From Basidiobolus meristosporus CBS 931.73 (lineage: Eukaryota > Fungi > Basidiobolomycota): a stretch of 64,000 nt of DNA. Position 1 is the stretch's first letter. Every line of letters starts with the position of its first letter. A program made the translations under genes and the position numbers. The DNA lies in contig MCFE01000123.1 of NCBI GenBank assembly GCA_002104905.1, positions 97,574 through 161,573 of the forward strand. Direction: 5' to 3'. The notes under the pieces are model-generated. The model made no database searches and had not been told where the DNA came from. It saw nothing but the letters and a program-made list of their open reading frames with translations. Below are positions 1 through 64,000 of the stretch, piece by piece.

Positions 1-1018
1 TGACAGTTTGATGCATATCATGCTTGAAACACATCCAGATAGCTCATATTCAGTGAGAGTTGTCAGCCAACATAATCAGAACTATGGATCTGACCATACT
101 GCTGCAGTTAAGCGGGTTTTTAGATATCTAAAAGGAACTGCTGATATCTGCTTAAGATACACTTACAAGGACTCAGAGCAGGATCTTTTGGGATATTCTG
201 ATGCTTATTGGGGACAAAATTTGGAAGACTGAAGATCCACCACAGGATACACCTTTCTTTACCGTAAAGGAGCAATTTCATGAAATTCAAGTGAGCAACC
301 AACCATAACACTATCTTCCACAGAGGCAGAGTACATGGCAGCCTGTGAGGCTACAACAGTAGCAATGCGGTTAAGAAAGCTTTTTGCAGACTTAGGCCTA
401 TGTCAAAAAATGCCTATTACTTTATTTCAAGATAAGTAAGGATGTTTACAATTAGGTAGAAATCCAACTTTTCATGCTAGAACCAAGCACATATATATTA
501 AACATCATTTCATACATGAAGCCATAGAGAATAACTTAGTTAGCTTAGTTTACTGTCCTACAAATGATATGATTGCAGACATATTTACCAAACTATTAGC
601 TAGAGACAAGTTTGAATATCTTAGGTCAAAATTAGGACTAGTCAGTATGAACATTTAGCTGAGTGGGAGTGTTGTAAGAATTTGTATTTCCACCCAAATA
701 TTCTCCTAACTTTGTCATTTAGAACATCACCTTCAAATCCTAGAGAATACTGACCAAATTCCTTGTCAGGATTCACTTAGAATATTTTCTCCAAAAAACC
801 TGGTACCTAGAACATGAAAATTCTCAAAGTGGTCCGTACTGCCCCAAACTTTGCACACATGTTCTTGGGACCTTCTTTAGCCTATTCTACATGCTTGCTA
901 TGCCAAGACCAGGTAAAAGTATAAGTACTACTTTTACATTCAATAAATCATTAAGTGAAAACCACATAATCAACTTGTCCTCCCAATCACTTCCAATATC
1001 TCTAAGACTCTTACAACA
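1..1018 (+). mobile_element. 3' part of a decayed Ty1/Copia LTR retrotransposon (RT/RNase H remnant, PPT, 3' LTR)
   Basis: ORF 8..232 has Copia motifs AVKRVFRYLKGT and LLGYSDAYW; following sequence resembles Copia RNase H with stops; purine-rich GAGTGGGAG at 661-669 immediately precedes the LTR start TGTTGTAAGA. Confidence 0.9.
670..1018 (+). repeat. Copia LTR, 349 bp
   Basis: Begins TGTTGTAAGA, ends TCTTACAACA (10-bp terminal inverted repeat); related copies at 3658, 5424, 5811, 9541, 54730-55947. Confidence 0.92.
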
Positions 1019-1172
1019 CTATCTCCCTTGTCAAAGCACCGGTCTGATGAGTGTCCTCTCCTTTTGCAGTAGTAGCAACATAGGTTGGTATTGCTCTTGG
1101 AAGATCTTGAGCATCTCCTTTATTGGTTATCATTGCTTATCAAAGCATTTTCTTCTTCCTTCTTCTTGGTGC
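1019..1172 (-). pseudogene. Copia gag fragment with zinc knuckle
   Basis: Minus strand reads CYYCKRRGHSSDRC (CX2CX4HX4C) preceded by KKEEENAL, matching gag in ORF 8110..9090. Confidence 0.8.
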
Positions 1173-3224: not shown

Positions 3225-3989
3225 CTGCATGGCAATTCTGTTAACTAGATTTTTCATTTCTTCTCCTGGCAGCATCTTTGCAGCAAAGAATGTTTGTCTC
3301 AGATAGCTATTCTTGGCAGCTTAGCATCACTGGTAGGTGTCTTCTAATACCTTCCAGACATTCTTTGCCATTTTTGCTGTTGAGCATTGAATTAGCAATT
3401 TGTCTTTAACTTTAAGGCAAATGCAGTTATAGGTACTTAATTATTTCTTCTGTGATTTCAAGGCTTCCTCTCCCATGCTTTTATGAGGGCATTCTTCTCC
3501 CATGACAATATTCCAAAGGCCTCTTTCTTATAGCAGTGTCTTTATCTTTAACTTTAACACTTGGTAGTTGGATCCGTCCAGCTTTTCAGCAGAGGGAAAA
3601 ATTCCAGTAATAGCAGTAGTAGATGTTACAGAGAGTGACAGCTTGGGGCCCATAACCTGTTGTGATAGTCTTGGAGATATTGGAAGCAATTGGGAGGACA
3701 AGTAGACTATGTGGTTCTCACTTAATGATTTATTGAATGTAAAAGTAGTATTTATACTTTTGCATGATCTTGGCATTGCAAGCACATAGAATTGGCTCAG
3801 GAAGGTCCCAAGAGCATGTGTGCAAGGCTGAGAACTTTTTGGACAACTTTGAGAATTTTCATGTTCTGGGTAAATATTCTAGGCAAATCCCAGCTGGGAA
3901 TTTGGTCAGTATTCTCTAAAGTCTGTGGGTAATGAGCTAAGTGCCTACATTTGGTGAATATATAAGTGGAGTTACAAACTTTTACAACA
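3225..3989 (-). mobile_element. Copia 5' LTR (3658-3989), PBS and gag N-terminal fragment
   Basis: LTR homologous to 670-1018; PBS GGTTATGGGCCC at 3657-3646; gag-like AITGIFPSAEKLDGSNYQV. Confidence 0.88.
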
Positions 3990-5423
3990 CCCAGCACATT
4001 GATGGATGACCAGCAAATGTCCATCATCACATCAGCACCACCTATATTAGCATGTATTTCATCAGCTTATACCAAAGCATTATTGAGGCAATTAGGTGCT
4101 GTGGCTAATAGCATAGATGCAATGGCCTAGAGATACCAGGAAATAGTCCAGAAGCCAGATGAGCAGATCATACATGTAGAGCAATCAATATCCCAGGTAG
4201 AGAATGCAGTATCTAGTCTGCAAAGAAGGAATCCAAGTAGTTCATTATCACAGACAAAATCTGAGCCATTTCCCAATGTAGCATCAGTGGAATTTTGTAC
4301 AGTATTTGAAGCACAAGGACAGTGCCCATAGATAAAGCTCACAGAACAACATATGACAGCCTGGGGGAGAGACTGCAGTATTTATACCAAATGCTAAAAA
4401 GCAAAAGACATTGTGAAGCTGTTCAGTGCAATGGTACACCATAGCCTAATATTCAAGATGCCATAAGAAGTTTAGCATGCCATCACCTTAAGGTCTGCAT
4501 AGAATGGGACCACCAGTGACTCAAGGCAAAGCAGAATGTGCTTAGTCTGCTCCATGAGTGTTATCCTGGATCCAAACAGGCCAAAGGATTTTAGGCTAGC
4601 ATTGGCATGCTAAGAGAGTATCTTAAGAATAGCAGAAACTATCAAAGGCAGAACAACAAGGGCACCATGGCCAAAAAGCAGCAGCTTCCTCAGGATTCTA
4701 TCACAAGCAAGGCTGAATGCTTAATGCAAGCAACAAATAAACATCAGGTAGCTGGAAGAGTTCTGGCAAGGGACAAGCAGGCAGAAACAGATACACCAGT
4801 GCAGTATACATCCAGGGTAAAGTGAAGTTAATAATAGGTGCACCAAGAAGTTGCATCACCTCTTCAAGTGCAGTGCTCAAGAAAATGCACTTGAATATTG
4901 CAAGCATTTATTGCCAGTACTGGCAGCTGAGGTGCTAGACCTTATAGTGCTGGCCAAAAACCTGGATGTTTGGGAACCCTTGAGTGAAGAATGGCATAGA
5001 GCTCTAGAATTACTGCAAAAGTCATGGAAAAAGGGCATTACAGCCAAAGCACTCATTGAATGGTGGATTTTTATGGAGTTACTTGTTGAATGTGCAAATG
5101 GGCTTAGTATTAGTGTTGGGTATAGGGACTTGTATAGGTCAGTGCAGTGAGCAAATATGGTACAACTAAAGGCTCAGCAGTAATAAGCCTACTTGTAGGC
5201 ATGAAAAGTAAGAGCATCAGTTGAGTCAGGAAGTAAGAAGTGTGAACAAGTAGCAACAGCCAATCAATGTACACAAATGTAGGAGGTGATTGAGTGTCTG
5301 GGATCAGAAAGTGAGATAAATGGCAGAGAACTAATGAAAAGCCAACTATGTATTGCTTTGATGAAAATTTTGACCAAGTTATTTATGCAATCTGAGATGT
5401 AAATTTTTTTTGATGGTCTTTTT

Positions 5424-8400
5424 TGTTGTAAGAGTCTTGGAGATATTGGAAGTGATTGGGAGAACATGTAGATTATGTGGTTTTCACTTAATGATTTATT
5501 GAATGTAAAAGTAGTATTGAAACTTTTACATGATCTTGGCATAACAAACATGTAGAATAGGCCTAGGAAGGTCCCAAGAACATGTGTGCAAAGTTTGGGC
5601 TGTTTGGACAACCTTGAAAATTTTCATCTTCTGGGTAAATATTCTAAGTAGATCCCACCAAGGAATCTTGTCAGTATTCTCTAGCACTTGAAGGTAGTAA
5701 TCTAAGTGACCAAGTTGGGTGAGTATTTAGGGGAATTACAAATTGTTACAACACTCCTACTCAGCTAAATGTTTATACTGACTAGTCCTAATTTTGACCT
5801 AAGATATACATGTTGTAACAATTTGTATTTCCACCTAAATATTCACCTAACTTAGTCACTTAGATCATCACCTTCAAATCCTACAGAATATTGACCAAAT
5901 TCCTTGTCAGGACTTACTTAGAATATTTCCACTAAAATACTAGGTGCCCAGAACATGAAAATTCTCAAAGTTGTCCAAACAGCCCCAAACTTGCACACAT
6001 GTTCTTGGGACCTTCCTAAGCCCATTCTACATGTTTTTTATGCCAAGACCATGTAAAAGTATAAATACTACTTTGACATTCAATAAATCATTAAGTGAAA
6101 ACCACATAATCTACTTGTTCTCCAAATCACTTCCAATATCTCCAAGACTCTTACAACAATACAAACTTGTCTCCAGCTAATGGTTTGGTGAGTATGTCTG
6201 CAATTATTTCATCTGAAGGACAGTACAATAAGCTTACTAAGTTGTTCTCTATAGCTTCATATATGGAGTGATGTCTAATATCTATGTGCTTAGTTCTAGC
6301 ATGAAAAGCTGGATTTCTACCTAATTGTATACATCCTTGATTATCTTACAATAAAGTAATAGGGATTATTTGACATAGGCCTAAATCTGTAAAAAGCTTT
6401 CTTAACCACATTGCTTCTTTTGTAGCTTCACAGGCAGCCATGTACTCTGTCTCTGTGGTGGAAAGCCCTATGTTTGGTTGCTTTCTTGAGTTTCATGAAG
6501 CTTCTCCTTTATAGTGAAGAAAGGTGTATTCTGTGGTGGATCTTCTGTTTTCCAAATTTTGTCCCCAATCAGCATCAGAGTATCCCACAAGAGTCTACTC
6601 TGAGTCCTTATAAGTGTATCTTAAGCAGATATCAGCAGTTCCTTTTAGGTATCAAAAAATCCACTTATCTGCTGCAATATGATCAGATCCATAGTTCTGA
6701 TTTTGCTGGCTGACAACCCCCACTGAATACAGGATATCTGGACATATTCCAAGCATGATATACATCCAACTGCCAACCATAGATTGATAAGGAAAGTCAG
6801 GGCATTCAGATGGCACCAAGCTCTCTTGATTTGGTTAAGTCTTGACCAAGTTAAGGTTTACCTCCATTGGGGTCGCTGCTGGTTTACAGTCTTCTATTTG
6901 ATACTTCTTTAGTATATCTTGAATATACTTGGACTGGCTTAGGGTGATAGTCTGGGTACTACCGTCTATGGAGAACTTAATCCCTAAGTAGTAACTGAGT
7001 TCTCCTAGAATGGGCATCTTGAACTCATTAGATAGACTGGATCTAGTCTCAAACAATGCTGCTAGGTCATTGGCAGCTATGATAAGCTCATCCACATATA
7101 GAGCTAATAGAACTGGACTTGCTCTGTCTGCCTTATAGTATATACTATAGTCAGCATTACTCCTTTTGAAACTCACAGACTCCAAATAAGAATCTATCTT
7201 GCAGTTCCAGGCTCTTGGTGATTCTTTGAAACCATATAGAGATTTTAAGCTTGCAGACCAAATGGGGTTATCTTGGTCAACAAACCCATCAGGCTGGTTC
7301 ATATACATGTCCTTATCAAAGACTCCATTCAAGAATGCAGTTTTTACCTACATTTGATGAATAAAAAACTTATATTTGGCGGCAAAAGCCAATATTAATG
7401 TGATGGAGTTAAACTTGGCTACCAGTGCAAAGGTCTTAGTATAGTCAAGTCCTTTTGTTTGAGAGTATCCTTTGGCCACAAGTCTTACTTTGTAACTCTC
7501 CATTATACCATCAGCCTTATACTTTGTCTTGAAGACCCATCTGATTTCCAAGCAGTTTCTTGGCATATGCTGTACACCCAAATACTTTTAGGTGTTCTGC
7601 ACTTGGTCTGCATCCATACCATGCTTCAAATGGAGTAGAACCACAAAGTATTCTGTTATGACTCCTATTTTTAAGGTATACACCTGTGGCAACTGATTTT
7701 GCCCAAAAACCATTGGATAATTTTTGATCATGGATCATAGATCTTGCCATATTGATTATTTATCTGTTAGCATGTTCTGCTACTCCATTTTACTATGAGG
7801 AGAATGGTACAATAGTCTCTTGCTTTATCCCATGAATTTTGCAGAAGTGGATGAAGAGCTTTGAGGAATATTCTTCACCTTTGACAGAGCATATTTTCTT
7901 TATTTTTTCACCAGTTTCTCTCTCCACCATGGCTTTAAACTCCCTGAACTTAGACAGAGCTTCTTCCTTTCTCTTTATGAAGAAGACCCAAATGTATTTT
8001 GTATAATCATCAATAAAAGAGTTTAAATACTTTACCCTGCCCCAGGATAAATTTTGCAAAGATCCACACAGATATGAGTGAGTTAGATCTAATTTTTTCT
8101 TAGTTCTCATTACCCCAGAGCTCTTGAACAGTTGACTGGCTTGTTTCCCATATATGCAGGTTTCACAGTGCTCCAAATTAGCTGGGGATCAATTTTTACT
8201 CCAGAAATTAGCTGATCTTTGATCATTTTACACAAGTTATCAAAATTAAAGTGCCCAAATCTCCTATGCCAAAGCATTGGTGTTTCTTTATTTAAGTTAC
8301 CTATATTGGCTTCCAGATATGATGGAATATAAGTCAACTTGTATAGATTTTGATCTCTGATACCCAAAGCAAGATGGGCACCATTTTGATCAGTGATCCT

Positions 8401-9872
8401 GCATCCAGAATTGTCAAAGCTGAAACTGAGTCCTTCTGCTGTGGCCTTGTTTACAGATAGTAGGTTCTTGGCTATTTCTGGTACATAGAGTACTTCCTTA
8501 AAGGTCAGTGTATAGCTTCCTTCACTACTTCTAAGGTTTACTTGGATACTTCCTTCTCCCACTGCATCAAGTGTTCTATTGTCACCCATGAAAACCTTCC
8601 TATCTGGAATTTCTTGGTATTGGGTAAAAAGTTCTTTTTGATGTGTAAAGTGTTGTGATGCTCCAGAGTCAATGTATAATGTCTGAGAATCCTTGTTTGT
8701 GGTCATATTTAGTGCAGATATGAATAGTCTATCTTCAGTTGTTGCAGCATTTCCAAATTCAGGCTTCTTTTGCTGATTATCTCTCTTTTTGAGACACCGG
8801 TCTAATGTGTGTCCTTTCCTTTTGCAGAAGTTACAAAGCAGGTTGCTTTTTTCTTTGAAAGGTCTTGGGTATCTTCTTTGTTGATTATCATTGCTTACCA
8901 AAGCATTTTCTTCTTCCTTCTTATTGGCACTTGATTTTCTTAGTTTTCCATCCAGAAGCCCTCCATATACGTAATTTAAGGTCAAATCTTCAGTTCTGGA
9001 CTCTAGGGCTGATACAAGGCCCTGAAGCTTGTCTGTCAGGCTATGCAGGATGGTTACTATCACATCTTCTTCAGTAGTTGGTGTGCCCACAAATTCATCT
9101 CATCCACCAGCAGAGTAACTCTGTTAATTAGATATTTCATTTCTTCTCCTGGCAGCATCTTTGTAGTAAGGAATTTTTGTCAAAGATACATTTTCTTAGC
9201 AGCTGAACATGACTGGTAGGTGTCTTCTAATGCCTTCCAGGCATCCTTTGCTGTTTTTGCTCTTGAGCATTGAATGAGCAATTTGTCCTTAACGTTTAGG
9301 CAAATGCAGTTAAAGGCACTATGTTCTTTCTTCTGGTACTTTAAGGCTTCCTCATCCACATTTTTATGAGGGCATTCTTCTCCCATGACAATATCCCAAA
9401 GGCCTCTTTCTTGTAGCAGCATCTTCATCTTCACCTTCCGCACTTGGTAGTTAAATCCATCTAATTTTTCAGCAGAGGGAAAAATTCCAGTAATAGCAGT
9501 AGTAGACATTGCAAAGAGTGACAGCTTAGTGCTCATAGCCTGTTGTAAGAGTCTTGGAGATATTGGAAGTGATTGGGAGAACAAGTGGATTATGTGGTTT
9601 TCACTTAATGACTTATTGAATGTAAAAGTAGTATTTATACTTTTATATGGTCTTGGCATAACAAACACATATGATAGGTTAAAGAAGGTCCCAAGTACAT
9701 GTGTGCAAAGTTTGGGGCTGTTTGGACAACTTATCTAATTTTCATGTTCTGGGTAAATATTCTAAGTAAATCCCAACAAGGAATTTGGTCAGTATTCTCT
9801 AGGATTTGAAGGTAATGATATAAGTGACAAAGTTAGGTGAATATTTAGGTGGAATTCCAAATTTTTGGAACA
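5424..9872 (-). mobile_element. Near full-length but decayed Ty1/Copia element (5' LTR 9541-9872, gag, protease, integrase, RT, RNase H, 3' LTR 5424-5753)
   Basis: Copia domain order in broken ORFs: gag 9180..9540; CNFCKRKGHTLDRC and YIDSGASQH (8110..9090); integrase FIDDYTKYIWV (7793..8176); RT LALYVDELII (6835..7332); integrase end is fused to RT start near 7560 (internal deletion); no matching TSD seen. Confidence 0.9.
5811..6158 (+). repeat. Solo Copia LTR nested in the RNase H region of the 5424-9872 element
   Basis: TGTTGTAAC...CTTACAACA flanked by 5-bp direct repeat ATACA (5806-5810 and 6159-6163). Confidence 0.9.
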
Positions 9873-11281
9873 GAATATGCCACAAGATTCTTCACCCACC
9901 TCTGCAAAATTTGTGTCATAAAGGAAGAGGCCACTTCACCGCACTCTCCACAGTAAATCTGAATGTCAAAGCATGAATGTAGATCTACAATTGATATAGC
10001 TAGATCTTCATCTGTGAACAAACATTATGCTACAATTCTTGGGTGGGATCATTTGCCATTGCTGTACATGTCTGAAATAGGAGATATAGTGGAATACTTT
10101 GTAGTTCTACTCCATTTGAGGTGCAGTATGGATATGAGCCAAATGCAGGTCATCTAAGAATATTTGGGTTGCACAGAATATGCAAAAGCTGCCCAGAAAT
10201 CTGCCACAATTTGGGTAAAAAGCAAGAAACCAGTATTTTTGAACAACTGCAATGAGAGTAAGATATAGAGACTTGGCAATACCAAAGCAAATAAGCTGAT
10301 CAAGTCCAGGCATGTTCTGTTTGATTAAAAGTCAGGGAACTCACAAAAATTGTATCAGGCAACTACAAAAATTTAATCTACATCCATCACAGAGCATGTC
10401 AATGAAAATTTTCTCACTCCAATGGACTCCACAACTGTTGTTCAGCCTGAATCAGTACCCAGAAATATCCCAGAAGTGATCATTCCAGTATCACAAGGCA
10501 GAAGATCCTACCAGATTAGCAACAGCCCAAGTTACTATATTGATGTGGGCACAGACTTAGCCTATGTCTATTCTGTCCCAGTAGATGAGCTCCAGGCAGT
10601 AATAAAGGCCCTAGAGGAGTGCTACATGGTAAACATGATCTGGAGGGAGGATATGGACACCATTTACTCAGTGTTATCATGGAAATGAGCAATCCTAGGC
10701 TTGTGGGTTCCATAAGGTAAGGAAAGATGGGACACGTGCAATAGGGAAGATTTTTGACACAGCGGAGGTGTGCTACAGATACAACGTATACGTCTTGCCG
10801 AATGAGCAATTGGGTGCTGTACTGATGATTTGCCAGAGTGGCCATGCGGGCATGGTTTTCCAATTTTGAAAATACTATTGAGTTTCCGGATTCTGCCCAG
10901 GTTAATGGTACGGTCATGCAACACATGGGCATAATAGAGCAGCCAACTACCGTTTCACCATCCATGCCACATATCTGATGATACGATTTCTCGGCTCATT
11001 TCCCAAACCCCTATCAACCGCATGGTTGCTGGAGCCACGTATCGCGTACCAATCCAATGACCCATGTCCACGGAAAGCGGAAAGATGGGGATTATGTGGT
11101 ACCAGATGAGCTTGATCAAATCTTCGCTGCACTTGGCCCGTTTATCGTTGCCCTTGGTTTCTTCGCGCAAGACAAGGTGGGATAGGATCGCCGTGACACG
11201 TGAACATTCCACATCTCCGATGGGGCCCATAAATAGGCCTGACCGCCACCAGATGCCGCAACCTTGATTCTTTTCCGCACC

Positions 11282-54729: not shown

Positions 54730-55947
54730 TGTTGTAAATTTAGTAATCACACATAAGTATTCACTCAACTTAGTCACTTGGATCATAGTCTACTAATCTT
54801 TGAGAACTCTGCCCAAATTCCTTGTCCAGATTTACTTGGAATATTATCACCAAATCATCAAGTACCCACAACATGAAAAATCTCAGATGTTCAAACAGCT
54901 CCAGACTTGGCACACATGTTCTTGGAGCCTTCCTAAGCATGCTCTACATGTTTGTTTGGCAAAGACCATGTAAAAGTATAAATACTACTTTATATGCAAT
55001 AAATCCTCAAGCAAAACTGTTGTAAAAATTTGGATTTCCACCTAAATATTCACCTAACTTAGTCACTTAGATTATTACCTTCAAATCCTAGAGAATACTG
55101 ACCAAATTCCTTGTTGGGATTTACTTAGAAGATTTACCCAGAACATGAAAATTCTCAAGGTTGTGCAAAAAGCCTCAAACTTTGCACACATGTGCTTGGG
55201 ACCTTCCTAAACCTAATCTACATGTTTGCTATTCCAGGATCATGTAAAAGTATAAATACTACTTTTACATGTAATAATGTTGTAAAAAGACGTAATTCCA
55301 CCTAGACATTCACCTAACTTAGTCACTTGGATCATTACCTCCAAATCCTAGAGAATACTGACCAAATTCCTTGTTGCAATTTACTTGGAATATTTACCCA
55401 GAACATGAGAATTCTCAAAGTTGTCCAAACAGCCCCAACCTTTGCACACATATTCTTGGGACATTCCTAAGCCTATTCTATGTGTTTTTAATGCCAAAAC
55501 CATGTAAAAGTATAAATACTACTTTAACATTCAATCAATCATTAAGTGAAAAACCACATAATCTACTTGTCCACCCAATCACTTCCAATATCTCCAAGAC
55601 TCTTACAACAGGTTATGAGCCCTAAGCTGTCACTCTCTGCAATGTCTACTACTGCTATTACTGGAATTTTCCCCTTTGCTGAAAAGTTGGATGGATCTAC
55701 CTACCAAGTGTGGGAGTTGAAGATGAAGATTCTGCTACAAGAAACAGGCCTTTGGGATATTGTCATGGGAGAAGAATGCCCTCCTAAAAACATGGGAGCA
55801 GAAGCCTTAAAGCACCAGAAGAAAGTGTTGTAAGAGTCTTGGAGATATTGGAAGTGATTTGGAGAACATGTAGATTATGTGGTTCTCACTTATTGATTTA
55901 TTGAATGTCAAAGTAGTATTTAGACTTTTACATGGTCTTGGCTTAAC
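54730..55947. mobile_element. Stack of Copia LTR pieces: truncated LTRs from 54730 and 55018, complete LTR 55278-55610 with PBS and gag start, inverted LTR piece 55826-55947
   Basis: Each starts TGTTGTAA and matches the LTR at 670-1018; PBS GGTTATGAGCCC at 55611-55622; gag-like AITGIFPFAEKLDGSTYQVW. Confidence 0.9.
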
Positions 55948-56100
55948 TTAGGGTTTAGGGGAGGGAAAGTCACCAAAGTAGGTGAAATCTTTATTTGATT
56001 TCAGACAAGTCTAACTACAAATAAAGAAGCCAGCTGGGAATAGAAGATTCCCAAAGTAAACACCAAGTTGAATATGAATAAATCTAAGCTAAAGTTAAGG
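55948..56100 (-). mobile_element. Short 3' stub of the telomeric retroelement family (insertion A)
   Basis: TTAGGGTTTAGGG, then shared tail GAGGGAAAGTCACC-AAAGTA-GGTGAAATCTTTATTT...AAAGAAGCCA. Confidence 0.75.
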
Positions 56101-56103
56101 CAG

Positions 56104-58114
56104 TAGGGGAGGGAAAGTCACCAAGTTGGTGAAATCTTTATTTGAGTTAAGTACTAATCTAGGTGCAAATAAAGAAGCCAATTAAGAGGTCTAGAACCTC
56201 TCTAATAAGTAATCTAATTTATGTTTTGTTTCATCTCTAATGTTTGTTTCAATAAAGTAAAGCTCATCAGGGGTAAATATAAAATTCAGGGGTTTTGGGG
56301 GAAGTACAAATTGTAGATGTTTCTGATCAATATAATCCAAGACTGGAACCCAGCCTGGGATTAGGTGTAGTAGGAAAGGTGTGTGGACTTGTAAGTAGCT
56401 CTGCCACATAGATCTTAGATGGTCCTGAGCCAGTAGTCTTGGTTTCTCAGCTTTTTGAAGTTTTGAAGCAAGCTCTGTTACTACAGCAGAGCCAACCAGG
56501 GTGTGCCAGCAAGAAGATTTCAGGGAGGAGTTAGATTGAAGCCATTGTTTGATGGAGGGGTTATGTGATTTCTGAAGTTTGACTAGGAAGGAAGCACGGA
56601 GATAGACCATTCGGATTTGGTATGGGTAGAAGCCAAAGGCTCCATTAGTTGCATGGATATAGGGAGATACTGGAAGATAAGGTACCAAGGATCTGATACA
56701 CTGATGGAGAAATTTATCCAGGCGGTGAAGTTCTCTGGAGGTTAGGGGTATAATGTGGAGACCAAATTCAAGTACCAGCAGTACATACTGCTTCAGAAGT
56801 ATAGGGATCTTTTGAATTGGAGTGTCTGGAGTGACTACTACCAGAAGCTTTTTGAGAGCCTGCTGGGCAAGATGGATCCTATTATTCAGGTGGAGCTTTG
56901 AGTCAATCCCATGTTGACAAAACGGCAGACCTAGATATATTGCAGTTTGTTGTGGCAGAATGCTAGTGTTCTGTATAGTTGTAGTGCATCCAATTGGGAC
57001 TGTCTTGGAAATTGAGAGTGAGAGGTTGTTGGCAGCCAAGTACTTCTCAATGATGGCAGTGTCTGCTATGGGATTAGGAGTAGCAATCTTGATATCATCC
57101 GCATAGAGGGTTAGTAGTGGATAGGGAGAGTCTGGTGAGGGGCCTTTTGGAAATAAAGGAAAGTCATGCAGGAATATCACAAATAGTAAGGGACCTAGTA
57201 CAGATCCTTGCACTACTCCATTTGGAACCTCATAAGTCTCTGATGTACAACTTGGATGCAAAATTTTGGCTGAGTTCTCACAAAATAGAGAACATACAAG
57301 AAGGGTCATTGGTAGTGTGGTAACTGCTAATAGCTTTCTCCAAAGCAGAGCTCTGTCCACAGAGTCAAAGGCTTTAGTAATGTCAAACAGAATGGTTGGC
57401 AATGAGAATTGAAGTGAACGATCATGGCTTAGCACTACAGCCATATCCAAGGAGAGTTTGGGCAAGAAGCCAAACTGAGAAGGATGGAATGGATATAGTT
57501 GAGATTGCAAGGATCTTGCTATTATAAGCTCAAAGATTTTCTGGCAGGTTGGTAGGAGTGAAACTGGCTGGTAAGAACCTGGGAGTGAGTGTTTCCCCTT
57601 CCCTTTGTATAAGGGTATTACATTTGCCTGTGACCAGACCTTTGGGGTGTCAATTGTTGGGCACAGATAGAGTAGAATGGGAGAAGTAAGTGACTCATTT
57701 TGGAGTAGCACACCCGGAGTAGATTGTAGGTAATCAAGTCATGTCCAGGTGCAGTATTTGCAGGAAGCTTCTTTAAAATTTTCTCCAGAAGCTTTGCTGA
57801 AACCAAAATTGGAGATGTTGGACTGCTAGATATGTTACCAGTATGGTAGAAAGGAGGAGTGGGATGCACGGTTGAATCAAAGAATATAGGGGCCAGTTTG
57901 TCTGGTGATGGTATACTCCTTGCTTGGGGTCTCATGGCTTTATATACTCTTGATATGGACCTTGTGGTGGCATTCATATTTACTAAGGGCAAGGTATCCA
58001 TGATATGAGCCCATAATCTAGTATGCTCAGTGATCTGTAGTGACTTGGAGTAGGAGATTGCGCTTTCCAGGAGGTTCTGTGTTTTTGGGTTAAGGAAACA
58101 TAGGTAGCTGGAAT
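56104..58114 (-). mobile_element. 5'-truncated non-LTR retrotransposon (insertion B): RT domain and 3' tail, no endonuclease or ORF1
   Basis: ORFs 57618..58001 and 56191..57711 with TAPGHD, YQPVSLL, FDITKAFDSVDR, GVVQGSVLGP, YADD (57094-57105); shared tail at 56104-56143; TTAGGG tract follows at 58115. Confidence 0.92.
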
Positions 58115-58140
58115 TTAGGGTTAGGGTTAGGGGTTAGGGG
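58115..58140 (+). repeat. Interstitial telomeric tract (similar short tracts at 55948, 58639, 63057, 63217, 63752)
   Basis: TTAGGG TTAGGG TTAGGGG TTAGGGG. Confidence 0.95.
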
Positions 58141-58638
58141 GAGGAAAGTCACCAAGTGGTGAAATCTTTATTTACTTATGACAAGTATCTAAAGAAGCCA
58201 AGTTAATCTGAAGTAATTCCTAGAAAGCTAGGTCTGAGAGATATCTTCCTGGTAAGCCAGGTCTGAGAGTTGAGAAGCTGAGTGGTACTATATTTCCTAG
58301 TTAGCTAGGTCTGAGAGAGGTTTCCTGGAAAGCCAGGCCTGAGAAGTGAGAATCTGAATATATCTGAGCTAAGTTTACTGGTTTGCGGTAGCTGAATTGT
58401 GGCCGGAATGGCCAGTAGACTGGGGGAACTGAGATGAATTTCTGGGCGATCACTGGCCAAATTTACTAGGCAAATCTGACCAATTAGCATTTCAAGGATT
58501 TCAGCCAATCAGAGCCTTTACTTTGCCCGATGGTTGATCAAGCCATCTCCCAATGAGCACACATCAATTTATTGATCAAATTTTGCTGGATCCAGGATTT
58601 GAACCCACAACCATGGGTATGGAAGGGTTAGGGATAAC
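58133..58638 (-). mobile_element. Non-coding tRNA-headed SINE-like element, copy 1 (head truncated, A-box lost)
   Basis: About 98% identical to 63226-63730 by eye; B-box GGTTCAAATCC at 58605-58595; 3' tail shared with the LINEs. Confidence 0.8.
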
Positions 58639-58708
58639 TTAGGGTTAGGGGGGGAGACAGTCACCAACAGGTGAAATCTTTATTTCAGTTGAAACAAAGA
58701 AGCCAGCG

Positions 58709-61478
58709 CTACTGTTGTAGCTTTGATACAAGAGTGTGGAGCTGAGGGGAATTTGTAGGTAAGTTAATAAGAAGTGATGATAGTTCTTCAGTGCTCAAGA
58801 CACTGTTCAGTGGGAAGGGGGGTAGCAAGAGAGGTAAGAATGACTTGTGAACAACATTAATGAGGGGAATGTGATAAGGATTGATATTCATCATAAAGGG
58901 AGTGTGCTGCTGCAGATATTGCTGCCAAAGGTCTGTCAAGTACTTCAGGTAGGCCAGCTTGGGTTTTTCTGACTGCAGAATATAGTGAGCAAACTTCTTG
59001 ACTTCAGGATCTCCAAGTATAGTTCTCCAGCAGGAGCCAGGTGTTGTGTGGTGTGTTCTCTTCCAGGCCTTAATCAGTGGGTTGTTGCAGTTGTGAAGTC
59101 TGAGGTATAATCTGGTTCTAAGGTAGAGAAGTCTGATCTTATGGGCATAAACCCAAAAGCACCAAGAATAGCATGTCTGTAGGGGCATTCAGGCAAATGA
59201 GGCACCAAGGAGGTAATGCACCATACTGCAAACTTGTCAAGCTTAGTGCAGTCTCTAGAAGTAAGAGAGAGAAGTGGTAAGCCAAATTCCAGGACAGGGA
59301 AGACAAACTGCTTGAGTAGAAGGAGGCAGCTGGGAGCTGAAGTTGTAGGAGGAGTAACAGCCAGTAGCTTGTGGAGTGCCTGTCTTGCCAGGATAATTCT
59401 CTTCTTCAGGTGTGCTCCAGAGTCTAGTCCAGTAGGAAGGAAAGGAAAGCCAAGATATGTAGCAGAAACCTGAGCAGGTAGAGTGGAGTTCTCCAAGTTG
59501 ATGGGAGAGCCCAAAGGTACTGTCTTTGCAATGGAAAGCTGGAGATTATTCTTCTGCAGATACTGGTGGATGGTCTGGGAGTCTTGTTGCACATTGGAGG
59601 AGGATATTCTGATGTCATCAGCAAAGAGAGTAACCAGGCAGTCAGCTGAGAGTCTTGGGAAATCATTCAGGAAGATGGCAAACAGTATAGGACCAAGCAC
59701 AGAGCCTTGAACCACTCCATTAGGAACTGAGAACACAGCTGATTGCTCACTTGGGTGCAGAATTCTTGCTTGTGGATCCAAAACAGAGACCTGACAAGGA
59801 GGGTGAGAGAGGTACTGGAGAAGCATTGCAACTTGGACCAAAGCAGATTTCTGTCAACTGAATCAAAGGCCTTAGTAATATCAAACAGAACAGAGGGATA
59901 CTTGCACTGGAGAGAGTGATCTTGGCTAAGTATGACTGCATATTCCAAGGAGAGGCCAGGAACAAAGCCAAACTGTGCAGGATGAAACTTGAGGGAGTCA
60001 GAGTAGAGCTCCTGAGCAAGCAGAAGCTCAAACACCTTTCTGCAGGTGGGCAGCAGAGATATTGGCCTGTAGGAGCTAGGATCCAGGTGCTTTCCTTTAC
60101 CCTTGTACAGTGGCAGAACATTTGCAAAGGACCATTCCTCAGGAGTAGAAAGCTGGGCTGAGCATTGCTGAAACAGTGGAAGCAGAAGTGCAGACATGGC
60201 CTTGGTACTAGTCTTCAGAAGCTCATAAGAGATTGTGTCCACACCTGGAGCAGTAGAGTTGGGAAGCCTCTTGAGCACATAATGGATTCTCCTTTGATCA
60301 AGTGCAAGTGGGATGGGCAGAGTCTTGAAGTCAGGATGAAAGCCAGGAGTTGAGTACTGCCTTTGTAGAGAAGAAGATGTTAGCCAGCTGTTCTGTTGAA
60401 GGTAACTTCCTGGAAGAGGGCCTCATTGCCCTGTAGAGTCTTGATACTGTTCTTGTTATAGAGTTGGAAGATTGCAGAGGCAAGGAACTCATAATATGAT
60501 CCCAGAGCTGAGTATGCAGAGTGTGGTGAATTGCCTTGGAGTGGTGTATTGCTGTCAGGAGGAGTTTCTCTGTTTTTGGGTTAGGGAAAGCTCAGGTAGC
60601 TTTGTTGCAGGGCTGAAACAATGGATTCCCATTTTCTTGAGGTAACAGCAGTAGTCTTGCATGGCAGTGAGAGGGAGGCAGACACCAGAATCAGATGCTT
60701 CACAAAGAGCCAGGCAAAGTTGAGATCATCTGGCAGAGAAAGTAGCAAACTGGCAAGCTTCAAGTAGTTCCCAAAGTCTTTCTTCTGATTCTTGGTAGCT
60801 TTGTGGGTGAGACACAGTAAGTTTTGGCAGCTTCTTCTTCACAACTGGTTGCATAGAAAGGGACCAGGCTGGGTGGTCAGAGGCTCTCAAGGATCCTAGC
60901 TCAGCTCCAGAGAATTGCTTAACTTCATTCACAAAGTAGAGGGCAGCAGCAGAAGGGCAGATCCAGTCAACACATCTTTTCTCAGATTGAGCACCTAGTG
61001 CTAGCAGATGGCTTTCTCTCAGGAAGTTCAGTAGGAATGTAGACCTTGGCTTCATTCTTGCAGTCAGAGTAGTCTTGTTCTCAGGATGGGGAATGTTGAG
61101 ATCTCCAAGCAAGATAACAGGTGTTGATATAGATTGTTGGTATTGCTGAACCTTCTGGCATATAACTTGCACTTCCTGAAGGGCAAGACTTGGAGGCAGA
61201 TAGCAGAGCACCAGACTGATAGTTGGCAACTGGAGAGCAGCACAGTAAGGGGAGTAAAGAGGAACACAGAGCTGAGGAGTATTGATGGTAGAAGAGATGA
61301 AGCAGATAGAGGAGGTATTCTTTGTTCTAGGAGTAGAAAAGCAATATAGATTAGTCAAAAGTATAGAGGGTAGCTGGACATCAATCAAACACAGGAGGGA
61401 AAATCTTGAAAGAAGTCTCTCTAGAGTTGGTCTTGATGGCTGTATGCTGTTGCAGTTAAGCAACAGAACTTCAGGTAG
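58709..61478 (-). CDS. LINE ORF2: AP endonuclease plus reverse transcriptase, about five frameshifts in this assembly
   Basis: APE motifs LLNCNSI, LCYLPP, LLGDLN, VDWI, SDH; RT motifs TAPGVD, YRPISLL, FDITKAFDSVDR, GVVQGSVLGP, FADD (59614-59625). Confidence 0.9.
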
Positions 61479-62987
61479 TCAGGCAGAGGTTGTAGCTTCT
61501 TCAGAGGCAGCATTGACAATGTGACCTGCAGAGTCCCAGAGCTCTTCAAATGGTGCATCACTTAAGTCAGCAAGGAGGGAAATGGCATGGTTCTTGAGGA
61601 AGTATGCCACATCATAGGAGGGGGCTTGTCTCTTGATGGCAGCAAAGAAAGACAGAATGGCAACATGGGCTGGAGGCTTGTTGAACAGTAGAGAGTCAGA
61701 GGATTCAGATTCTTCAGGCACTATCTTGAAGTCAGTTTTCAGCCAGTTAAGGTTCTTCTCCACAAAGGCAACAAATGGGTCAGCAATGTTTTGGTCTAGG
61801 ATAACCTCCAGAATCTTCCCTTTTCTCCAGGCCAGGTTGACAATTCTTGAGAGCTGAATATTGCATGCCTTGAGTGCTTTCCTGATGTTGGAAATGGGAG
61901 TCCAGGGAACTTGCTTCAAGTACACCACAGTCCAGGTAGAAGCTGGTGGTAGGTTTGCTGGGGGCTTGTAAGTCCTTCTGTGTTGCAATGGAGCTGCAGT
62001 AGTCAGATTGGAGTCCACATTCTCAGTAGAAGGTTTTCTTGATGTGTCTTGCTGAATAGTACTGGAGCTGGATGTGCTGATAATTCTTGCTAGAACCTTG
62101 CCTGCATAAGTCTGAGGTATAGCTGAGGTGACTGTAGAGGTGGTGGCAGCTGGTGCAGGTGGAGAGGCAGAGACTGAAGCAGGAACTGAGGTCACCTGGG
62201 AGAAGGCAGTGGAAGCAGGTTTTCTGGGAGGAACAGAGTTCACTATCCAGTTGTTCTGTAAAACACTGGAGTAGCTTTTCTGTGGAACAGGATCTTGCTC
62301 TTGAACAGGAACAGAAGCAGGAGGCTGGGGCTGAGCAGTAGTGGTAAGGCAGTGGCACTCCAAGGAAGCTTTTTGCAAGGCATCTCTGGCAGTTTTCAGG
62401 GCAGTATTGGCTTCATTCTTGAGCTTCTTGCATTGGGCATCCAGTCTCTTGTTTTCAATAGCCAGGGCAGTATTGGCAGCCTCTAAATCAGCAATTCTCT
62501 TCTCAATTGCAAGGAATCTCTGAAGAAATGCATCAGTAGAAGTGCTGGCATCTGGGAGAGCAGTGGCAGGAATAGAGTCCATTGACAGTGGGCTTCTTGG
62601 AGGCAAGGAAAGTGGACTGGCAGATTCAGGCACAAAAGGAGATATCCTGGCAGGAGGAGAAGGAGTATCCAAGGCAGTAACAGAGGCAATTCTTGTTGGT
62701 GAAGCAGCAGCAGGGGAGGCAAGCCTGTTCAGAAACTGGGCAGGAGAGAGTGCTTGAGGAGAGGGAGTCTTCAGCTTGCCAAGCATGTCTTCCATCAGAG
62801 TGATACCAATATTCCTGGTGCATTTGCAGAGAAAAGTAAGCTTCCTGAGTCTGCCAGCTCTTCCATTCCTTCTGATAGTTCCTTTGTTTCCACAGTTGGG
62901 GCAAGAAATCTTCTTGACAGACTTGTCAAAGCAATCAAGAACCTTCCTTTCAGGTGTAGTGGGCTCCTGTTGAGGTTTTGGTGGCAT
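61479..62987 (-). CDS. LINE ORF1 (gag-like), 502 aa, intact
   Basis: ATG at 62987; N-terminal CPNC...CKC zinc motif, Pro/Ser-rich linker, coiled coil (RFLAIEKRIADLEAAN...), putative RRM-like block TVVYLKQVP...IRKALKACNIQLSRIVNLAW. Confidence 0.85.
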   Translation of the reverse strand: MPPKPQQEPTTPERKVLDCFDKSVKKISCPNCGNKGTIRRNGRAGRLRKLTFLCKCTRNIGITLMEDMLGKLKTPSPQALSPAQFLNRLASPAAASPTRIASVTALDTPSPPARISPFVPESASPLSLPPRSPLSMDSIPATALPDASTSTDAFLQRFLAIEKRIADLEAANTALAIENKRLDAQCKKLKNEANTALKTARDALQKASLECHCLTTTAQPQPPASVPVQEQDPVPQKSYSSVLQNNWIVNSVPPRKPASTAFSQVTSVPASVSASPPAPAATTSTVTSAIPQTYAGKVLARIISTSSSSTIQQDTSRKPSTENVDSNLTTAAPLQHRRTYKPPANLPPASTWTVVYLKQVPWTPISNIRKALKACNIQLSRIVNLAWRKGKILEVILDQNIADPFVAFVEKNLNWLKTDFKIVPEESESSDSLLFNKPPAHVAILSFFAAIKRQAPSYDVAYFLKNHAISLLADLSDAPFEELWDSAGHIVNAASEEATTSA

Positions 62988-63225
62988 ATCCAGAGTTTCA
63001 GCTTCAAATTTCAATTTTTGAGATTTTTGGGTGATTTTTGATGGGCGGGATCAAAATTAGGGTTAGGGTTGCGCGCTGTGACTGCTTTTTACGATTGCAA
63101 GGTCAGAATCCTAGGAAAAAATAAAAATACTTAGTAAAGGTGATTTAATGGATGGATGGATGGATTCGGAGTCAGATTCAATCAAAAAATCAAATCGTTG
63201 ACTAATTTAAAGAGGAGGGTTAGGG

Positions 63226-63751
63226 TAGGGGGAGGAAAGTCACCAAGTGGTGAAATCTTTATTTACTTATGACAAGTATCTAAAGAAGCCAAGTTAATCT
63301 GAAGTTATTCCTAGAAAGCTAGGTCTGAGAGATATCTTCCTGGTAAGCCAGGTCTGAGAGTTGAGAAGCTGAGTGGTACTATATTTCCTAGTTAGCTAGG
63401 TCTGAGAGTTGTTTCCTGGAAAGCCAGGCCTGAGAAGTGAGAATCTGAATATATCTGAGCTAAGTTATACTGGTTTGCGGTAGCTGAATTGTGGCCGGAA
63501 TGGCCAGTAGACTGGGGGAACTGAGAGGAATTTCTGGGCGATCACTGGCCAAATTTACTAGGCAAATCTGGCCAATTAGCATTTCAAGGATTTCAGCCAA
63601 TCAGAGCCTTTACTTTGCCCAATGGTTGATCAAGCCATCTCCCAATGAGCACACATCAATTTATTGATCAAATTTTGTTGGATCCAGGATTTGAACCCAC
63701 AACCATGGGTATGGAAGGGTTAGGGATAACCACAAGGCTAAGTGTTCTTGG
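63226..63751 (-). mobile_element. Non-coding tRNA-headed SINE-like element, copy 2 (complete head)
   Basis: A-box-like TAGCCTTGTGG (63740-63730) and B-box GGTTCAAATCC (63697-63687) 32 nt apart; hairpin-rich body; LINE-shared 3' tail. Confidence 0.82.
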
Positions 63752-63759
63752 TTAAGGGT

Positions 63760-63798
63760 TAGGGGAGGAAGTCACCAAGTGGTGAATCTTATTATGAC
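63760..63798 (-). mobile_element. About 40-bp 3' stub of the same family directly under the terminal telomere tract
   Basis: GAGGAAGTCACCAAGTGGTGAATCTTATTATGAC matches the SINE tail with homopolymer shortening. Confidence 0.7.
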
Positions 63799-63839
<41 letters not shown>

Positions 63840-64000
63840 GGTTAGGGTTAGGGTTAGGGTTAGGGTTAGGGTTAGGGTTAGGGTTAGGGTTAGGGTTAGG
63901 GTTAGGGTTAGGGTTAGGGTTAGGGTTAGGGTTAGGGTTAGGGTTAGGGTTAGGGTTAGGGTTAGGGTTAGGGTTAGGGTTAGGGTTAGGGTTAGGGTTA
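63799..64000 (+). repeat. Telomere (TTAGGG)n, about 33 units to the window end
   Basis: Near-perfect TTAGGG array with one TTTAGGG variant, G-rich strand running 5'->3' outward. Confidence 0.99.

What the first reader, a model, noticed from the sequence alone, without database searches (positions are those of the whole stretch)
55948..64000. Chromosome end built from a head-to-tail array of telomere-targeted LINEs and SINEs separated by short TTAGGG tracts
Seen: six insertions (stub A, truncated LINE B, SINE 1, full LINE D, SINE 2, stub E), all on the minus strand with 5' ends facing the tip. Each 3' end is fused to 1-4 TTAGGG-like units, and a normal (TTAGGG)n caps the array. Known analogues: this polarity matches Drosophila HeT-A/TART and silkworm TRAS; the known fungal telomeric element MoTeR (Magnaporthe) uses a restriction-like endonuclease rather than APE. 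Inference: an APE-type LINE family specialised for telomeric repeats or chromosome ends, alternating with telomerase, plus a non-autonomous partner. I do not know of a described fungal system of this kind.
Basis: partly seen in the sequence, partly recalled or inferred. Interest (0 to 1): 0.95.

Follow-up and report, generated by a model that had tools for sequence, protein, structure and literature searches.

The report
Telomere-bound LINE/SINE array in Basidiobolus
The last 8 kb of this Basidiobolus (early-diverging fungus) chromosome end is a one-way stack of retrotransposons and their parasites that end in the telomere repeat instead of poly(A). I found no published description of a telomere-directed system with this enzyme type and partner set in fungi.

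Summary
Window 55948-64000 carries six minus-strand retroelement copies under a 33-unit (TTAGGG)n cap, all with their 5' ends toward the tip.

- **Host:** Basidiobolus meristosporus CBS 931.73, or a near-identical strain.
- **Coding:** the LINEs encode ORF1, then a UGA, then an in-frame ORF2 with a divergent but selected APE endonuclease (dN/dS 0.13) and an RT.
- **Shared tail:** LINEs, an ORF1-only family (stub A) and a SINE share a 3' module of two hairpins, a C-run and (CCCTAA)0.5-4. None has poly(A).
- **Other places:** the same families, polarity and junction style recur at a second contig end of the genome. They also recur in B. ranarum and in unrelated assemblies. Read contigs show at least 86 different head-to-tail joints.

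- LINE B has no telomere unit at its 3' junction.
- LINE D runs to 63217 and carries a conserved internal (CCCTAA)2 in its 5' leader.
- The frameshifts in LINE D's ORF2 vanish with five 1-nt differences seen in the read contigs.
- The short tracts may be templated by the element itself rather than made by telomerase.

Known fungal telomeric non-LTR elements (MoTeR, FoTeR, Cnl1) are REL-endonuclease types, so this is a new variant of a known kind. First-stage readers of this scan noted the same architecture on many other pieces of this genome; those notes are unchecked. Genome-wide exclusivity, the RT clade and the priming mode remain untested.

The parts
55948..55961 (+). Telomere-like tract TTAGGG-TTTAGGGG. 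It joins subtelomeric DNA to the tail of stub A. The last four G are the element's C-run.
55962..56105 (-). Stub A: the 3' end (about 144 nt) of an ORF1-only element family, 5'-truncated.
   Evidence: 99% and 98% identical to L001:493-632 and L001:2001-2140. There the family shows an ORF1 C-terminal domain followed directly by a 3' UTR of about 110 nt and the tail.
56106..58114 (-). LINE B: a 5'-truncated autonomous LINE with an intact 506-aa RT and C-terminal frame (56191-57711). Its C-run abuts stub A with no telomere unit.
   Evidence: Pfam RVT_1 at 1.2e-18. 98.5% identical to L001:4173-6184, where the copy carries a full ORF2.
58115..58141 (+). Tract TTAGGG TTAGGG TTAGGGG TTAGGGGG between the truncated 5' end of LINE B and the tail of SINE1.
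58142..58638 (-). SINE1: a copy lacking about 22 nt at its 5' end, 98% identical to SINE2.
58639..58654 (+). Tract TTAGGG TTAGGGGGGG at the 3' end of LINE D.
58655..63217 (-). LINE D, full length (4563 nt). In order from its 5' end: CpG-rich leader 63071-63217; internal (CCCTAA)2 63057-63070; rest of the 5' UTR; ORF1 61479-62987 (502 aa); UGA; in-frame ORF2 58709-61478 (APE then RT); 54-nt 3' UTR made of the two hairpins.
   Evidence: Pfam. APE alignment and model. RT alignment. The leader is collinear in other families and in B. ranarum contig L133. ORF2 is continuous over 922 codons once the five read-contig indels are applied.
63218..63232 (+). Tract GG TTAGGG TAGGGGG between the 5' end of LINE D and the tail of SINE2.
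63233..63751 (-). SINE2: full length (519 nt). It has an A-box-like motif at +12, a B box at +55, no T4 run, four internal hairpin repeats of about 38 nt, and a LINE-type 3' module.
   Evidence: Not called as a tRNA by ARAGORN or Rfam.
63752..63765 (+). Tract TTAAGGG TTAGGGG between the 5' end of SINE2 and stub E.
63766..63798 (-). Stub E: the last 33 nt or so of a SINE-type tail, capped directly by the terminal repeat.
   Evidence: Homopolymer error at 63768.
63799..64000 (+). Terminal (TTAGGG)n cap: 33 units with one TTTAGGG. The window ends inside it.

Best explanation
This is a real chromosome end of Basidiobolus meristosporus. It carries a consortium of telomere-directed non-LTR retroelements:
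- at least two autonomous LINE lineages, B and D
- an ORF1-only family, A
- a SINE

The LINEs encode ORF1 (zinc ribbon, coiled coil, alpha/beta domain). ORF2 (APE endonuclease plus RT) follows a conserved UGA-CUN stop in frame.

All members share a 3' module of roughly 55-80 nt. It consists of hairpin 1 (10 bp, containing AAUAAA), hairpin 2 (UCACC/GGUGA), a pyrimidine spacer, a C-run, and then UAA(CCCUAA)n in place of poly(A).

Inferred mechanism:
1. The RT recognises the hairpin module, as in 'stringent' LINE/SINE pairs.
2. The terminal CCCUAA pairs with a TTAGGG 3'-OH of the G strand. That 3'-OH is either the chromosome end itself or a nick made by the APE domain.
3. cDNA synthesis then extends the G strand outward. 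This fixes the orientation, with the 5' end toward the tip.
4. The result is a head-to-tail array of variably 5'-truncated copies.
5. The outermost copy is re-capped with (TTAGGG)n, presumably by telomerase.

Shown here: the anatomy, the polarity, the shared structured tail, selection on the APE domain and on ORF2 as a whole, recurrence at other ends and in other species, and many independent junctions.

Inferred, not shown: the priming chemistry, tail recognition by the RT, the role of telomerase, and any benefit to the host.
For: - Polarity: 6 of 6 copies in the window and 6 of 6 in L001 (the end of GCA_002104905.1 contig MCFE01000090.1) have their 5' ends toward the end.
- Tail: 22 tails from at least 9 families share the module. 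21 of 22 run into TA(A)(CCC..).
- Structure: 95.9% of cells are paired, against 39-54% when the partners are slid. Four pairs show double changes.
- APE: the N, D, GDLN, D and SDH motifs are invariant. The model has pLDDT 76. Its top Foldseek hit is the TRAS1 endonuclease at E 2e-10, about level with APE1. dN/dS is 0.13 for the APE domain and 0.14-0.18 for ORF2.
- Independent events: the read contigs give at least 86 joints. These link different LINE D truncation points to tails through 0-4 TTAGGG units. The summed depth of the read contigs falls about 10-20-fold from the 3' to the 5' end of LINE D. A 947-nt contig runs unbroken from ORF1 through the LINE D 5' UTR and the internal TTAGGG dimer into the leader.
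- Copies at the two ends are 98-99% identical but have different neighbours.
- The same tail and head-to-tail order occur in independent ENA and Logan assemblies L002-L012. The LINE D 5' leader and ORF1 occur on B. ranarum contig L133, which holds no tail or junction.
- No LINE homology or tail lies in the other 56 kb of the window, nor in the other 10 kb of L001.
- Precedent: MoTeR arrays have the same polarity and short interstitial tracts (PMC7367193). Stringent LINE/SINE pairs share structured tails (PMC4176376).
Against: - Genome-wide distribution was not testable here. An unchecked first-stage note (s1-236095) reports a copy that leaves TTAGGG at an internal site.
- L001 holds 870 bp of non-element DNA inside its array. 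One LINE B tail there is joined to it through only TAAACC.
- Tracts between copies are 0-4 units, although the cap has at least 33. Simple insertion at random places in a normal telomere does not fit this. It needs short or uncapped ends, a nick near the base of the repeat, later loss of long tracts, or template jumps.
- No RNA run was listed, so there is no transcript evidence.
- The read evidence comes from the same sample as the assembly.
- TERT was not located.
- The RT clade is unassigned.
Confidence: 0.7

Rival explanations
1. This is an ordinary LINE/SINE pair whose microsatellite-like 3' repeat happens to equal the telomere unit. Copies insert anywhere, or into the TTAGGG units left by earlier copies (self-nesting). 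They survive mainly in gene-poor subtelomeres, so the arrays reflect passive accumulation rather than use of the chromosome end.
For: - Interstitial tracts are only 0-4 units.
- Some tails are joined to non-telomeric DNA (L001:6184 and L001:7896).
- The APE domain is kept under selection, as expected for endonuclease-dependent insertion.
- There is an unchecked note of an internal copy.
Against: - Orientation is uniform, 12 of 12, at two ends.
- The outermost stub is capped directly by the terminal repeat.
- No copies lie in 66 kb of adjacent internal DNA.
- The terminal unit is exactly the host telomere repeat in every lineage seen.
Confidence: 0.15
2. The arrays are relics spread between subtelomeres by recombination or break-induced replication. 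Ongoing retrotransposition plays no part.
For: - Copies at two ends are 98-99% identical.
- MoTeR arrays are known to be remodelled in this way (PMC7367193).
- The LINE bodies are CpG-depleted.
Against: - The neighbours and junctions of the shared copies differ between the two ends.
- At least 86 distinct truncation-to-tail joints and a 3'-to-5' depth gradient are the marks of repeated reverse transcription.
- Open reading frames are intact and under purifying selection.
Confidence: 0.07
3. Many junctions arise within a single event. The RT jumps from the 5' end, or a break, in one template RNA to the 3' end of another. A concatemer is then laid down at once and capped once.
For: - Some junctions have no telomere unit or only TAA (window 56105/56106; L001:7896; L004:523).
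- The tract next to the older element usually begins exactly with TTAGGG, as expected for run-off copying of an RNA that ends in CCCUAA.
Against: - Tract lengths vary up to 4 units and contain irregular units.
- Nothing here separates one event from several.
- Template jumping has not been tested for this RT.
Confidence: 0.05
4. The array is a misassembly of repeats at a contig end.
For: The assembly does contain 1-nt indel errors here.
Against: - A read contig bridges the LINE D 5' UTR, the internal TTAGGG dimer and the leader.
- The same architecture appears at another contig end and in independent assemblies from other samples and another species.
Confidence: 0.01

Closest known systems
MoTeR1/MoTeR2 of Pyricularia (Magnaporthe) oryzae, with FoTeR and Cnl1 (CRE-clade telomeric non-LTR elements of fungi)
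   Same: - They form head-to-tail arrays in fungal telomeres, with 5' ends toward the tip.
- Copies have no poly(A). The 3' ends are joined to whole or partial TTAGGG units.
- 5' truncation is variable and interstitial tracts are short.
- There is a non-autonomous partner.
- MoTeR has telomere-like repeats near its 5' end (PMC7367193, PMC12857005).
   Different: Those elements have a single ORF with a restriction-like endonuclease after the RT. Here there is an N-terminal APE domain and a separate ORF1 read through a UGA. There is also a two-hairpin tail, an ORF1-only family and a SINE with Pol III-type boxes. The host is a zoopagomycete, not a member of the Dikarya.
TRAS1 (and SART1) of Bombyx mori, R1 clade
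   Same: - They are APE-type LINEs specific for telomeric repeats that coexist with telomeric repeats.
- TRAS has the same polarity relative to the G strand.
- The TRAS1 endonuclease is the top structural match to the APE model, at E 2e-10, though it is about level with APE1.
   Different: TRAS and SART carry poly(A) tails, CCHC knuckles in ORF1 and a Cys-His motif after the RT. None of these is present here. No RT phylogeny was done.
HeT-A / TART / TAHRE of Drosophila
   Same: - A polar head-to-tail array at the chromosome end.
- A consortium of RT-encoding elements plus a Gag-only (ORF1-only) element that depends on them.
   Different: Drosophila lacks telomerase and telomeric repeats, and its elements end in oligo(A). 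Here a (TTAGGG)n cap persists and the tails end in the telomere unit.
Stringent-type LINE/SINE pairs such as UnaL2/UnaSINE1 and ZfL2 (L2 clade)
   Same: The LINE and the SINE share a conserved, structured 3' tail followed by a short terminal repeat rather than poly(A). The tail is what the RT recognises (PMC4176376, PMC1636434).
   Different: In those pairs the terminal repeats are unrelated to telomeres and the copies are dispersed. Here the terminal repeat is the telomere unit and the copies stack at chromosome ends.
Athena / Coprina, endonuclease-deficient Penelope-like elements at telomeres
   Same: Their 3' ends carry the complement of the telomeric repeat, and they are thought to be primed by the G overhang.
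   Different: Those elements are Penelope-like RTs without an endonuclease. Here a LINE-type RT sits next to a conserved APE domain.

Membership tests
Telomere-associated non-LTR retrotransposons (functional class) | Copies lie in or next to terminal telomeric repeats. | tested here: met
A second array lies at the contig end in L001.
Telomere-associated non-LTR retrotransposons (functional class) | Single orientation relative to the chromosome end. | tested here: met
   6 of 6 in the window and 6 of 6 in L001 have the 5' end toward the tip.
Telomere-associated non-LTR retrotransposons (functional class) | Absent, or rare, at internal sites across the genome. | tested here: inconclusive
   None in 56 kb plus 10 kb of adjacent DNA. 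The whole genome was not searchable. One unchecked note reports an internal copy.
Telomere-associated non-LTR retrotransposons (functional class) | Demonstrated transposition onto telomeres. | not testable with these tools
   This needs time-series long reads or an assay.
APE-type LINE | An N-terminal apurinic-endonuclease-like domain with catalytic residues, followed by a LINE RT. | tested here: met
   - Pfam hits fall below the gathering score.
- The motifs N, GDLN, D and SDH are invariant. The catalytic Glu position is Asp in all six lineages.
- The model has an APE fold.
- dN/dS is 0.13.
- RVT_1 matches reach 1e-27, and the best PDB match is L1 ORF2p at 8e-12.
R1 clade (TRAS/SART) | CCHC zinc knuckles in ORF1, a Cys-His motif after the RT, and a poly(A) tail. 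| tested here: not met
   ORF1 has one C2C2 ribbon, a coiled coil and an alpha/beta domain. There is no conserved Cys-His motif after the RT. There is no poly(A).
R1 clade (TRAS/SART) | The RT groups with R1-clade references in a phylogeny. | not tested
   No reference LINE set (Repbase or Dfam) was available. The nearest database RTs outside Basidiobolus are unnamed and at most 37% identical.
CRE clade (MoTeR/FoTeR/Cnl1) | A restriction-enzyme-like endonuclease downstream of the RT, in a single ORF. | tested here: not met
   The endonuclease is APE-type and upstream of the RT. There are two ORFs. Nothing matches a REL domain in Pfam.
Stringent-type LINE/SINE partnership | The SINE and the LINE share a conserved, structured 3' tail with a short terminal repeat. 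| tested here: met
   The shared module occurs in LINE B, LINE D, family A and the SINE. Covariation exceeds the controls.
Stringent-type LINE/SINE partnership | The tail is required for mobilisation by the cognate RT. | not testable with these tools
   This needs a retrotransposition assay with tail mutants.
tRNA-derived SINE | Internal Pol III A and B boxes in a tRNA-like head. | tested here: inconclusive
   An A-box-like motif lies at +12 and GGTTCAAATCC at +55. There is no T4 run, which 6% of shuffles also lack. ARAGORN and Rfam find no tRNA.
Penelope-like telomeric elements (Athena/Coprina) | A Penelope-type RT without an endonuclease. | tested here: not met
   The architecture is LINE-type ORF2 with a conserved APE domain.

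The most novel reading that the evidence does not exclude
Basidiobolus runs a HeT-A/TART-like division of labour alongside telomerase. RT-encoding LINEs, an ORF1-only element and a SINE, all ending in the telomerase-template-like CCCUAA, would add themselves preferentially to critically short or broken ends. They would act as a back-up healing system. The conserved (CCCTAA)2 in the CpG-rich 5' leader would then serve as a built-in seed for re-capping, or as a binding site for telomere proteins. This would be a convergent, intermediate stage between selfish telomere-targeting elements and the retrotransposon telomeres of Drosophila, and it would be experimentally tractable.
Probability: 0.2. 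Interest if true: 0.9.

Novelty: new variant of a known kind. Interest (0 to 1): 0.75.

Why it matters
Telomere-directed retrotransposons are known from a handful of lineages: insects, Giardia, Chlorella, a lizard, rotifers and a few Dikarya fungi. They are central to ideas on how telomerase and retroelements relate.

This system adds several things:
- An early-diverging fungus as host.
- A different enzyme architecture from all described fungal cases: an APE endonuclease with ORF1 read through a stop codon.
- A structured tail that ends in the telomere unit itself.
- A full consortium of autonomous LINEs, an ORF1-only element and what may be the first telomere-stacked SINE.

It offers a natural test of three questions. 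Does end-targeting work by base pairing of the RNA 3' end with the G strand? Why do such elements keep an endonuclease? Can retroelement addition and telomerase share the work at one chromosome end?

Tried and rejected
1. **A seventh insertion at 63071-63217.** I first read this stretch, flanked by TTAGGG on both sides, as a separate element. I rejected that reading. The same order (leader, GCGC, AACCCTAACCCTAA, UTR, ATG) is present in B. ranarum, and the leader is collinear with the 5' UTRs of other LINE families.
2. **Metagenome scan with the tail pattern**. It gave 120 hits, almost all single matches in bacterial-looking contigs. None had the C-run, so they are chance matches.
3. **Rfam and ARAGORN on the array**. 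They found no tRNA or other known RNA, so a tRNA origin of the SINE head rests on box motifs only.
4. **Clade assignment.** PDB sequence searches, the protein atlas and cluster names give only 'APE+RT LINE'. No named clade could be assigned.
5. **ORF1 fold search**. Nothing scored below E 0.09. An RRM-like topology is suggested but not shown.
6. **RNA runs.** None was listed, so transcription is untested.
7. **Host protein look-up by exact sequence**. Nothing was on record. The host was identified through the LINE homologue instead.
8. **TERT.** It could not be searched for, because no tool-supplied query was available and the genome is not searchable here.


Full report
**Observation.** The window ends in 33 TTAGGG units (63799-64000, one TTTAGGG variant), with the G strand running 5'->3' to the end. 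TTAGGG dimers occur 37 times against 0.21 expected, all from 58115 onward. A tail motif (GTCACC, a 4-6-nt loop, GGTGAA) occurs six times, always on the + strand. The positions are 55969, 56117, 58148, 58660, 63239 and 63771. It occurs nowhere else in the 64 kb. LINE ORF1 and ORF2 homology is confined to 56.2-63.0 kb. They lie on the minus strand with their 5' ends toward the tip. Exact coordinates are in the parts list.

**Host and recurrence.**
- The best homologue of LINE B's RT is K493DRAFT_348252 of Basidiobolus meristosporus CBS 931.73.
- Its locus L001 is the last 18.8 kb of contig MCFE01000090.1. L001 holds 98-99% identical copies of LINE B, LINE D and stub A. Its six tails all have the 5' end toward the contig end, but their neighbours differ from those in the window.
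- L001 shows that stub A belongs to an ORF1-only family. An ORF1 C-terminal domain is followed at once by a 3' UTR of about 110 nt and the tail.
- Related LINEs (49-62% amino-acid identity) sit on independent ENA and Logan contigs L002-L012. They carry the same tail, CCCTAA units and head-to-tail order. L009, for example, holds two different LINE families in tandem.
- ORF1 has only seven homologues among 5.8 billion proteins, one of them from B. ranarum.

**Proteins.**
- *ORF1 to ORF2.* ORF1 ends in UGA followed by CU[ACU] in six lineages. ORF2 continues in frame, and its first APE motif starts 4-5 codons later.
- *APE domain.* It falls below Pfam's gathering score and finds nothing useful in PDB by sequence. 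Even so, the motifs N, GDLN, D and SDH are invariant, and the catalytic Glu position is Asp in all six lineages.
- *APE model.* An AlphaFold model (pLDDT 76) matches APE-fold nucleases. The TRAS1 endonuclease ranks first at E 2.2e-10, about level with human APE1.
- *Selection.* dN/dS is 0.13 for the APE domain, 0.26 for ORF1 and 0.14-0.18 for ORF2.
- *RT.* It has an FADD centre and no Cys-His motif after it. Its best PDB match is L1 ORF2p at 8e-12.
- *ORF1 model.* It shows a zinc ribbon, a 60-residue coiled coil and an alpha/beta domain with RRM-like topology. There was no significant fold match.
- *LINE D frameshifts.* LINE D's ORF2 is frameshifted in the assembly. Five 1-nt differences (at 59142, 59780, 60360, 60590 and 60812) are present in all or nearly all of the X3 read-contig depth (53 of 60 at 60590) and in 40-100% of the X1 and X2 depth. 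Applying them gives one 922-codon frame. Either the assembly is wrong at those sites, or this copy is broken while the family is intact.

**Tail.**
- Twenty-two tails from at least nine families share one plan: AATAAAGATT, then [T/A]CACC, a 4-6-nt loop, GGTG[A/G/T], a pyrimidine spacer and a run of 4-9 C. In 21 of 22 the run continues into TA(A)(CCC...), even where the neighbour is not telomeric.
- Folding shows two hairpins in every family. On 13 tails, 95.9% of cells pair, against 39-54% when the partners are slid. Four pairs show double changes, and 0 of 500 shuffles reach the observed covariation score.
- The module is nearly the whole 54-nt 3' UTR of LINE D.
- The SINE and stub E carry the B/A subtype of the tail.
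- At least one CCCTAA unit is therefore part of the element. The 0-4 unit tracts need not have been made by telomerase.

**5' leader.** I first took 63071-63217 for a seventh unit, because TTAGGG flanks it on both sides. B. ranarum contig L133 shows the same order: leader, GCGC, AACCCTAACCCTAA, UTR, ATG. Other LINE families have a collinear leader ahead of their UTRs. LINE D is therefore 4563 nt long, with a conserved internal telomeric dimer. Its leader has CpG o/e 1.17, against 0.01 in the body.

**Reads.**
- Contigs of runs from the assembly's own sample give at least 86 joints. These link many different truncation points in LINE D to the tails of other copies, with 0-4 TTAGGG units between.
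- The summed depth of the read contigs falls 10-20-fold from the 3' to the 5' end of LINE D.
- More than 20 different flanks of the LINE D tail end in GGGTTA.
- One 947-nt contig runs unbroken from ORF1 through the LINE D 5' UTR and the internal TTAGGG dimer into the leader.
- Taken together, this points to repeated, independent reverse-transcription events rather than a misassembly or a single duplicated block.

**Mechanism.** The orientation is the one expected if a TTAGGG 3'-OH of the G strand primes cDNA synthesis on an RNA that ends in CCCUAA. By analogy with stringent LINE/SINE pairs, the hairpin module is the RT's handle, and the ORF1-only and SINE families borrow it (PMC4176376). Whether the primer is the natural end or an APE-made nick is open. 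Selection on the APE domain argues that it is used.

The tracts (0-4 units, median about 1) are far shorter than the cap (at least 33 units). At about 0.15 per event, 17 random insertions into such a cap would leave tracts this short with a probability near 1e-14. Several explanations remain:
- Addition happens at very short or broken ends.
- Nicks are made near the base of the repeat.
- Long tracts are lost afterwards. This is shown for MoTeR, where tracts of three or more repeats break (PMC7367193).
- The RT jumps between templates.

**Comparison and novelty.** Telomeric non-LTR elements listed in the literature are:
- TRAS/SART (R1 clade)
- HeT-A/TART/TAHRE (Jockey clade)
- Zepp and Tx1-1_ACar (L1-like)
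- MoTeR and GilM/GilT (CRE clade)
- Athena (Penelope-like) (PMC10088271)

The fungal cases (MoTeR, FoTeR and Cnl1, plus Cnl1-like elements in Malassezia) belong to, or sit nearest, the CRE/REL group (PMC12857005 and PMC10055393). Three searches found nothing on Basidiobolus or Zoopagomycota telomeric elements. The system works like MoTeR arrays and like HeT-A/TART. It fails the defining features of the CRE and R1 families. I therefore file it as a new variant: an APE-type, stringent-tailed, telomere-unit-terminated consortium that includes a SINE.

**Limits.**
- There is no genome-wide map, and one unchecked note reports an internal copy.
- There is no RNA evidence.
- The RT clade is unassigned.
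- TERT was not located.
- The read support comes from the same sample as the assembly.
- First-stage readers of this scan noted the same architecture on many other pieces of this genome. Those notes are leads, not support.

Noticed in passing
window 61476-61484; L002:1449-1457; L004:2669-2677; L009:1595-1603; L011:2115-2120; L012:1690-1698: The ORF1 stop is always UGA followed by CU[ACU], a known read-through context. ORF2 follows in frame with no start codon of its own. This holds in six diverged lineages and suggests an ORF1-ORF2 fusion made by programmed read-through.
   Followed up: partly
window 63071-63217 versus 58655-63056: The 147-nt 5' leader of LINE D has CpG o/e 1.17. The 4.4-kb body has 0.01 (2 CpG). 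The leader's CpG-containing motifs are shared with other species, as expected of a protected or selected promoter in an otherwise methylation-decayed element.
   Followed up: partly
window 63057-63070; L133:146-159: A telomeric dimer (AACCCTAACCCTAA on the element strand) is embedded in the 5' leader of the LINE D family in both B. meristosporus and B. ranarum. It could be a telomere-protein binding site or a seed for re-capping.
   Followed up: partly
window 61380-61382 (APE motif II); alignment A1 column 33: The catalytic Glu of APE-type endonucleases (the QET/QEP motif) is Asp (CLIDV) in all six lineages. I recall no other LINE endonuclease with Asp at this position; that is from memory and was not checked here.
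   Followed up: no
window 59142, 59780, 60360, 60590, 60812, 63768: Here the read contigs differ from the assembly by single-base indels. They account for all the apparent frameshifts in LINE D's ORF2.
   Followed up: yes
window 63308-63450 and 58214-58360: The SINE body holds four repeats of about 38 nt. Each has a small hairpin (CCUGG..CCAGG or CCUAG..CUAGG) with paired changes between copies.
   Followed up: partly
window 55008-55527 and 55500-55935: Just inside the array lie a 260-nt tandem duplication and an inverted repeat of about 110 nt per arm. The inverted repeat encloses a fragment that looks like the N-terminus of a copia-type Gag.
   Followed up: no
window 1-10000: A second CpG-depleted block (o/e 0-0.1) contains a copia-type Gag/pre-integrase ORF at 8110-9090. 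The genes between the two blocks have CpG o/e of about 0.8.
   Followed up: no
L001:10790-18266: Five tandem genes, four of 181 aa and one of 231 aa, each with a CHAP domain (PF05257, typically bacterial) lie directly inside the telomeric array of the other contig end.
   Followed up: no
L001:6190-7057: About 870 bp of CpG-containing DNA that matches none of the element families sits inside the L001 array. It includes an internal repeat of about 155 nt. A LINE B tail is joined to it through only TAAACC.
   Followed up: no
all tails, e.g. window 58677-58686: AAUAAA is invariant in all 22 tails and forms the 3' arm of hairpin 1, about 35 nt before the end of the element. It may double as a polyadenylation or cleavage signal that defines the RNA 3' end.
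   Followed up: no
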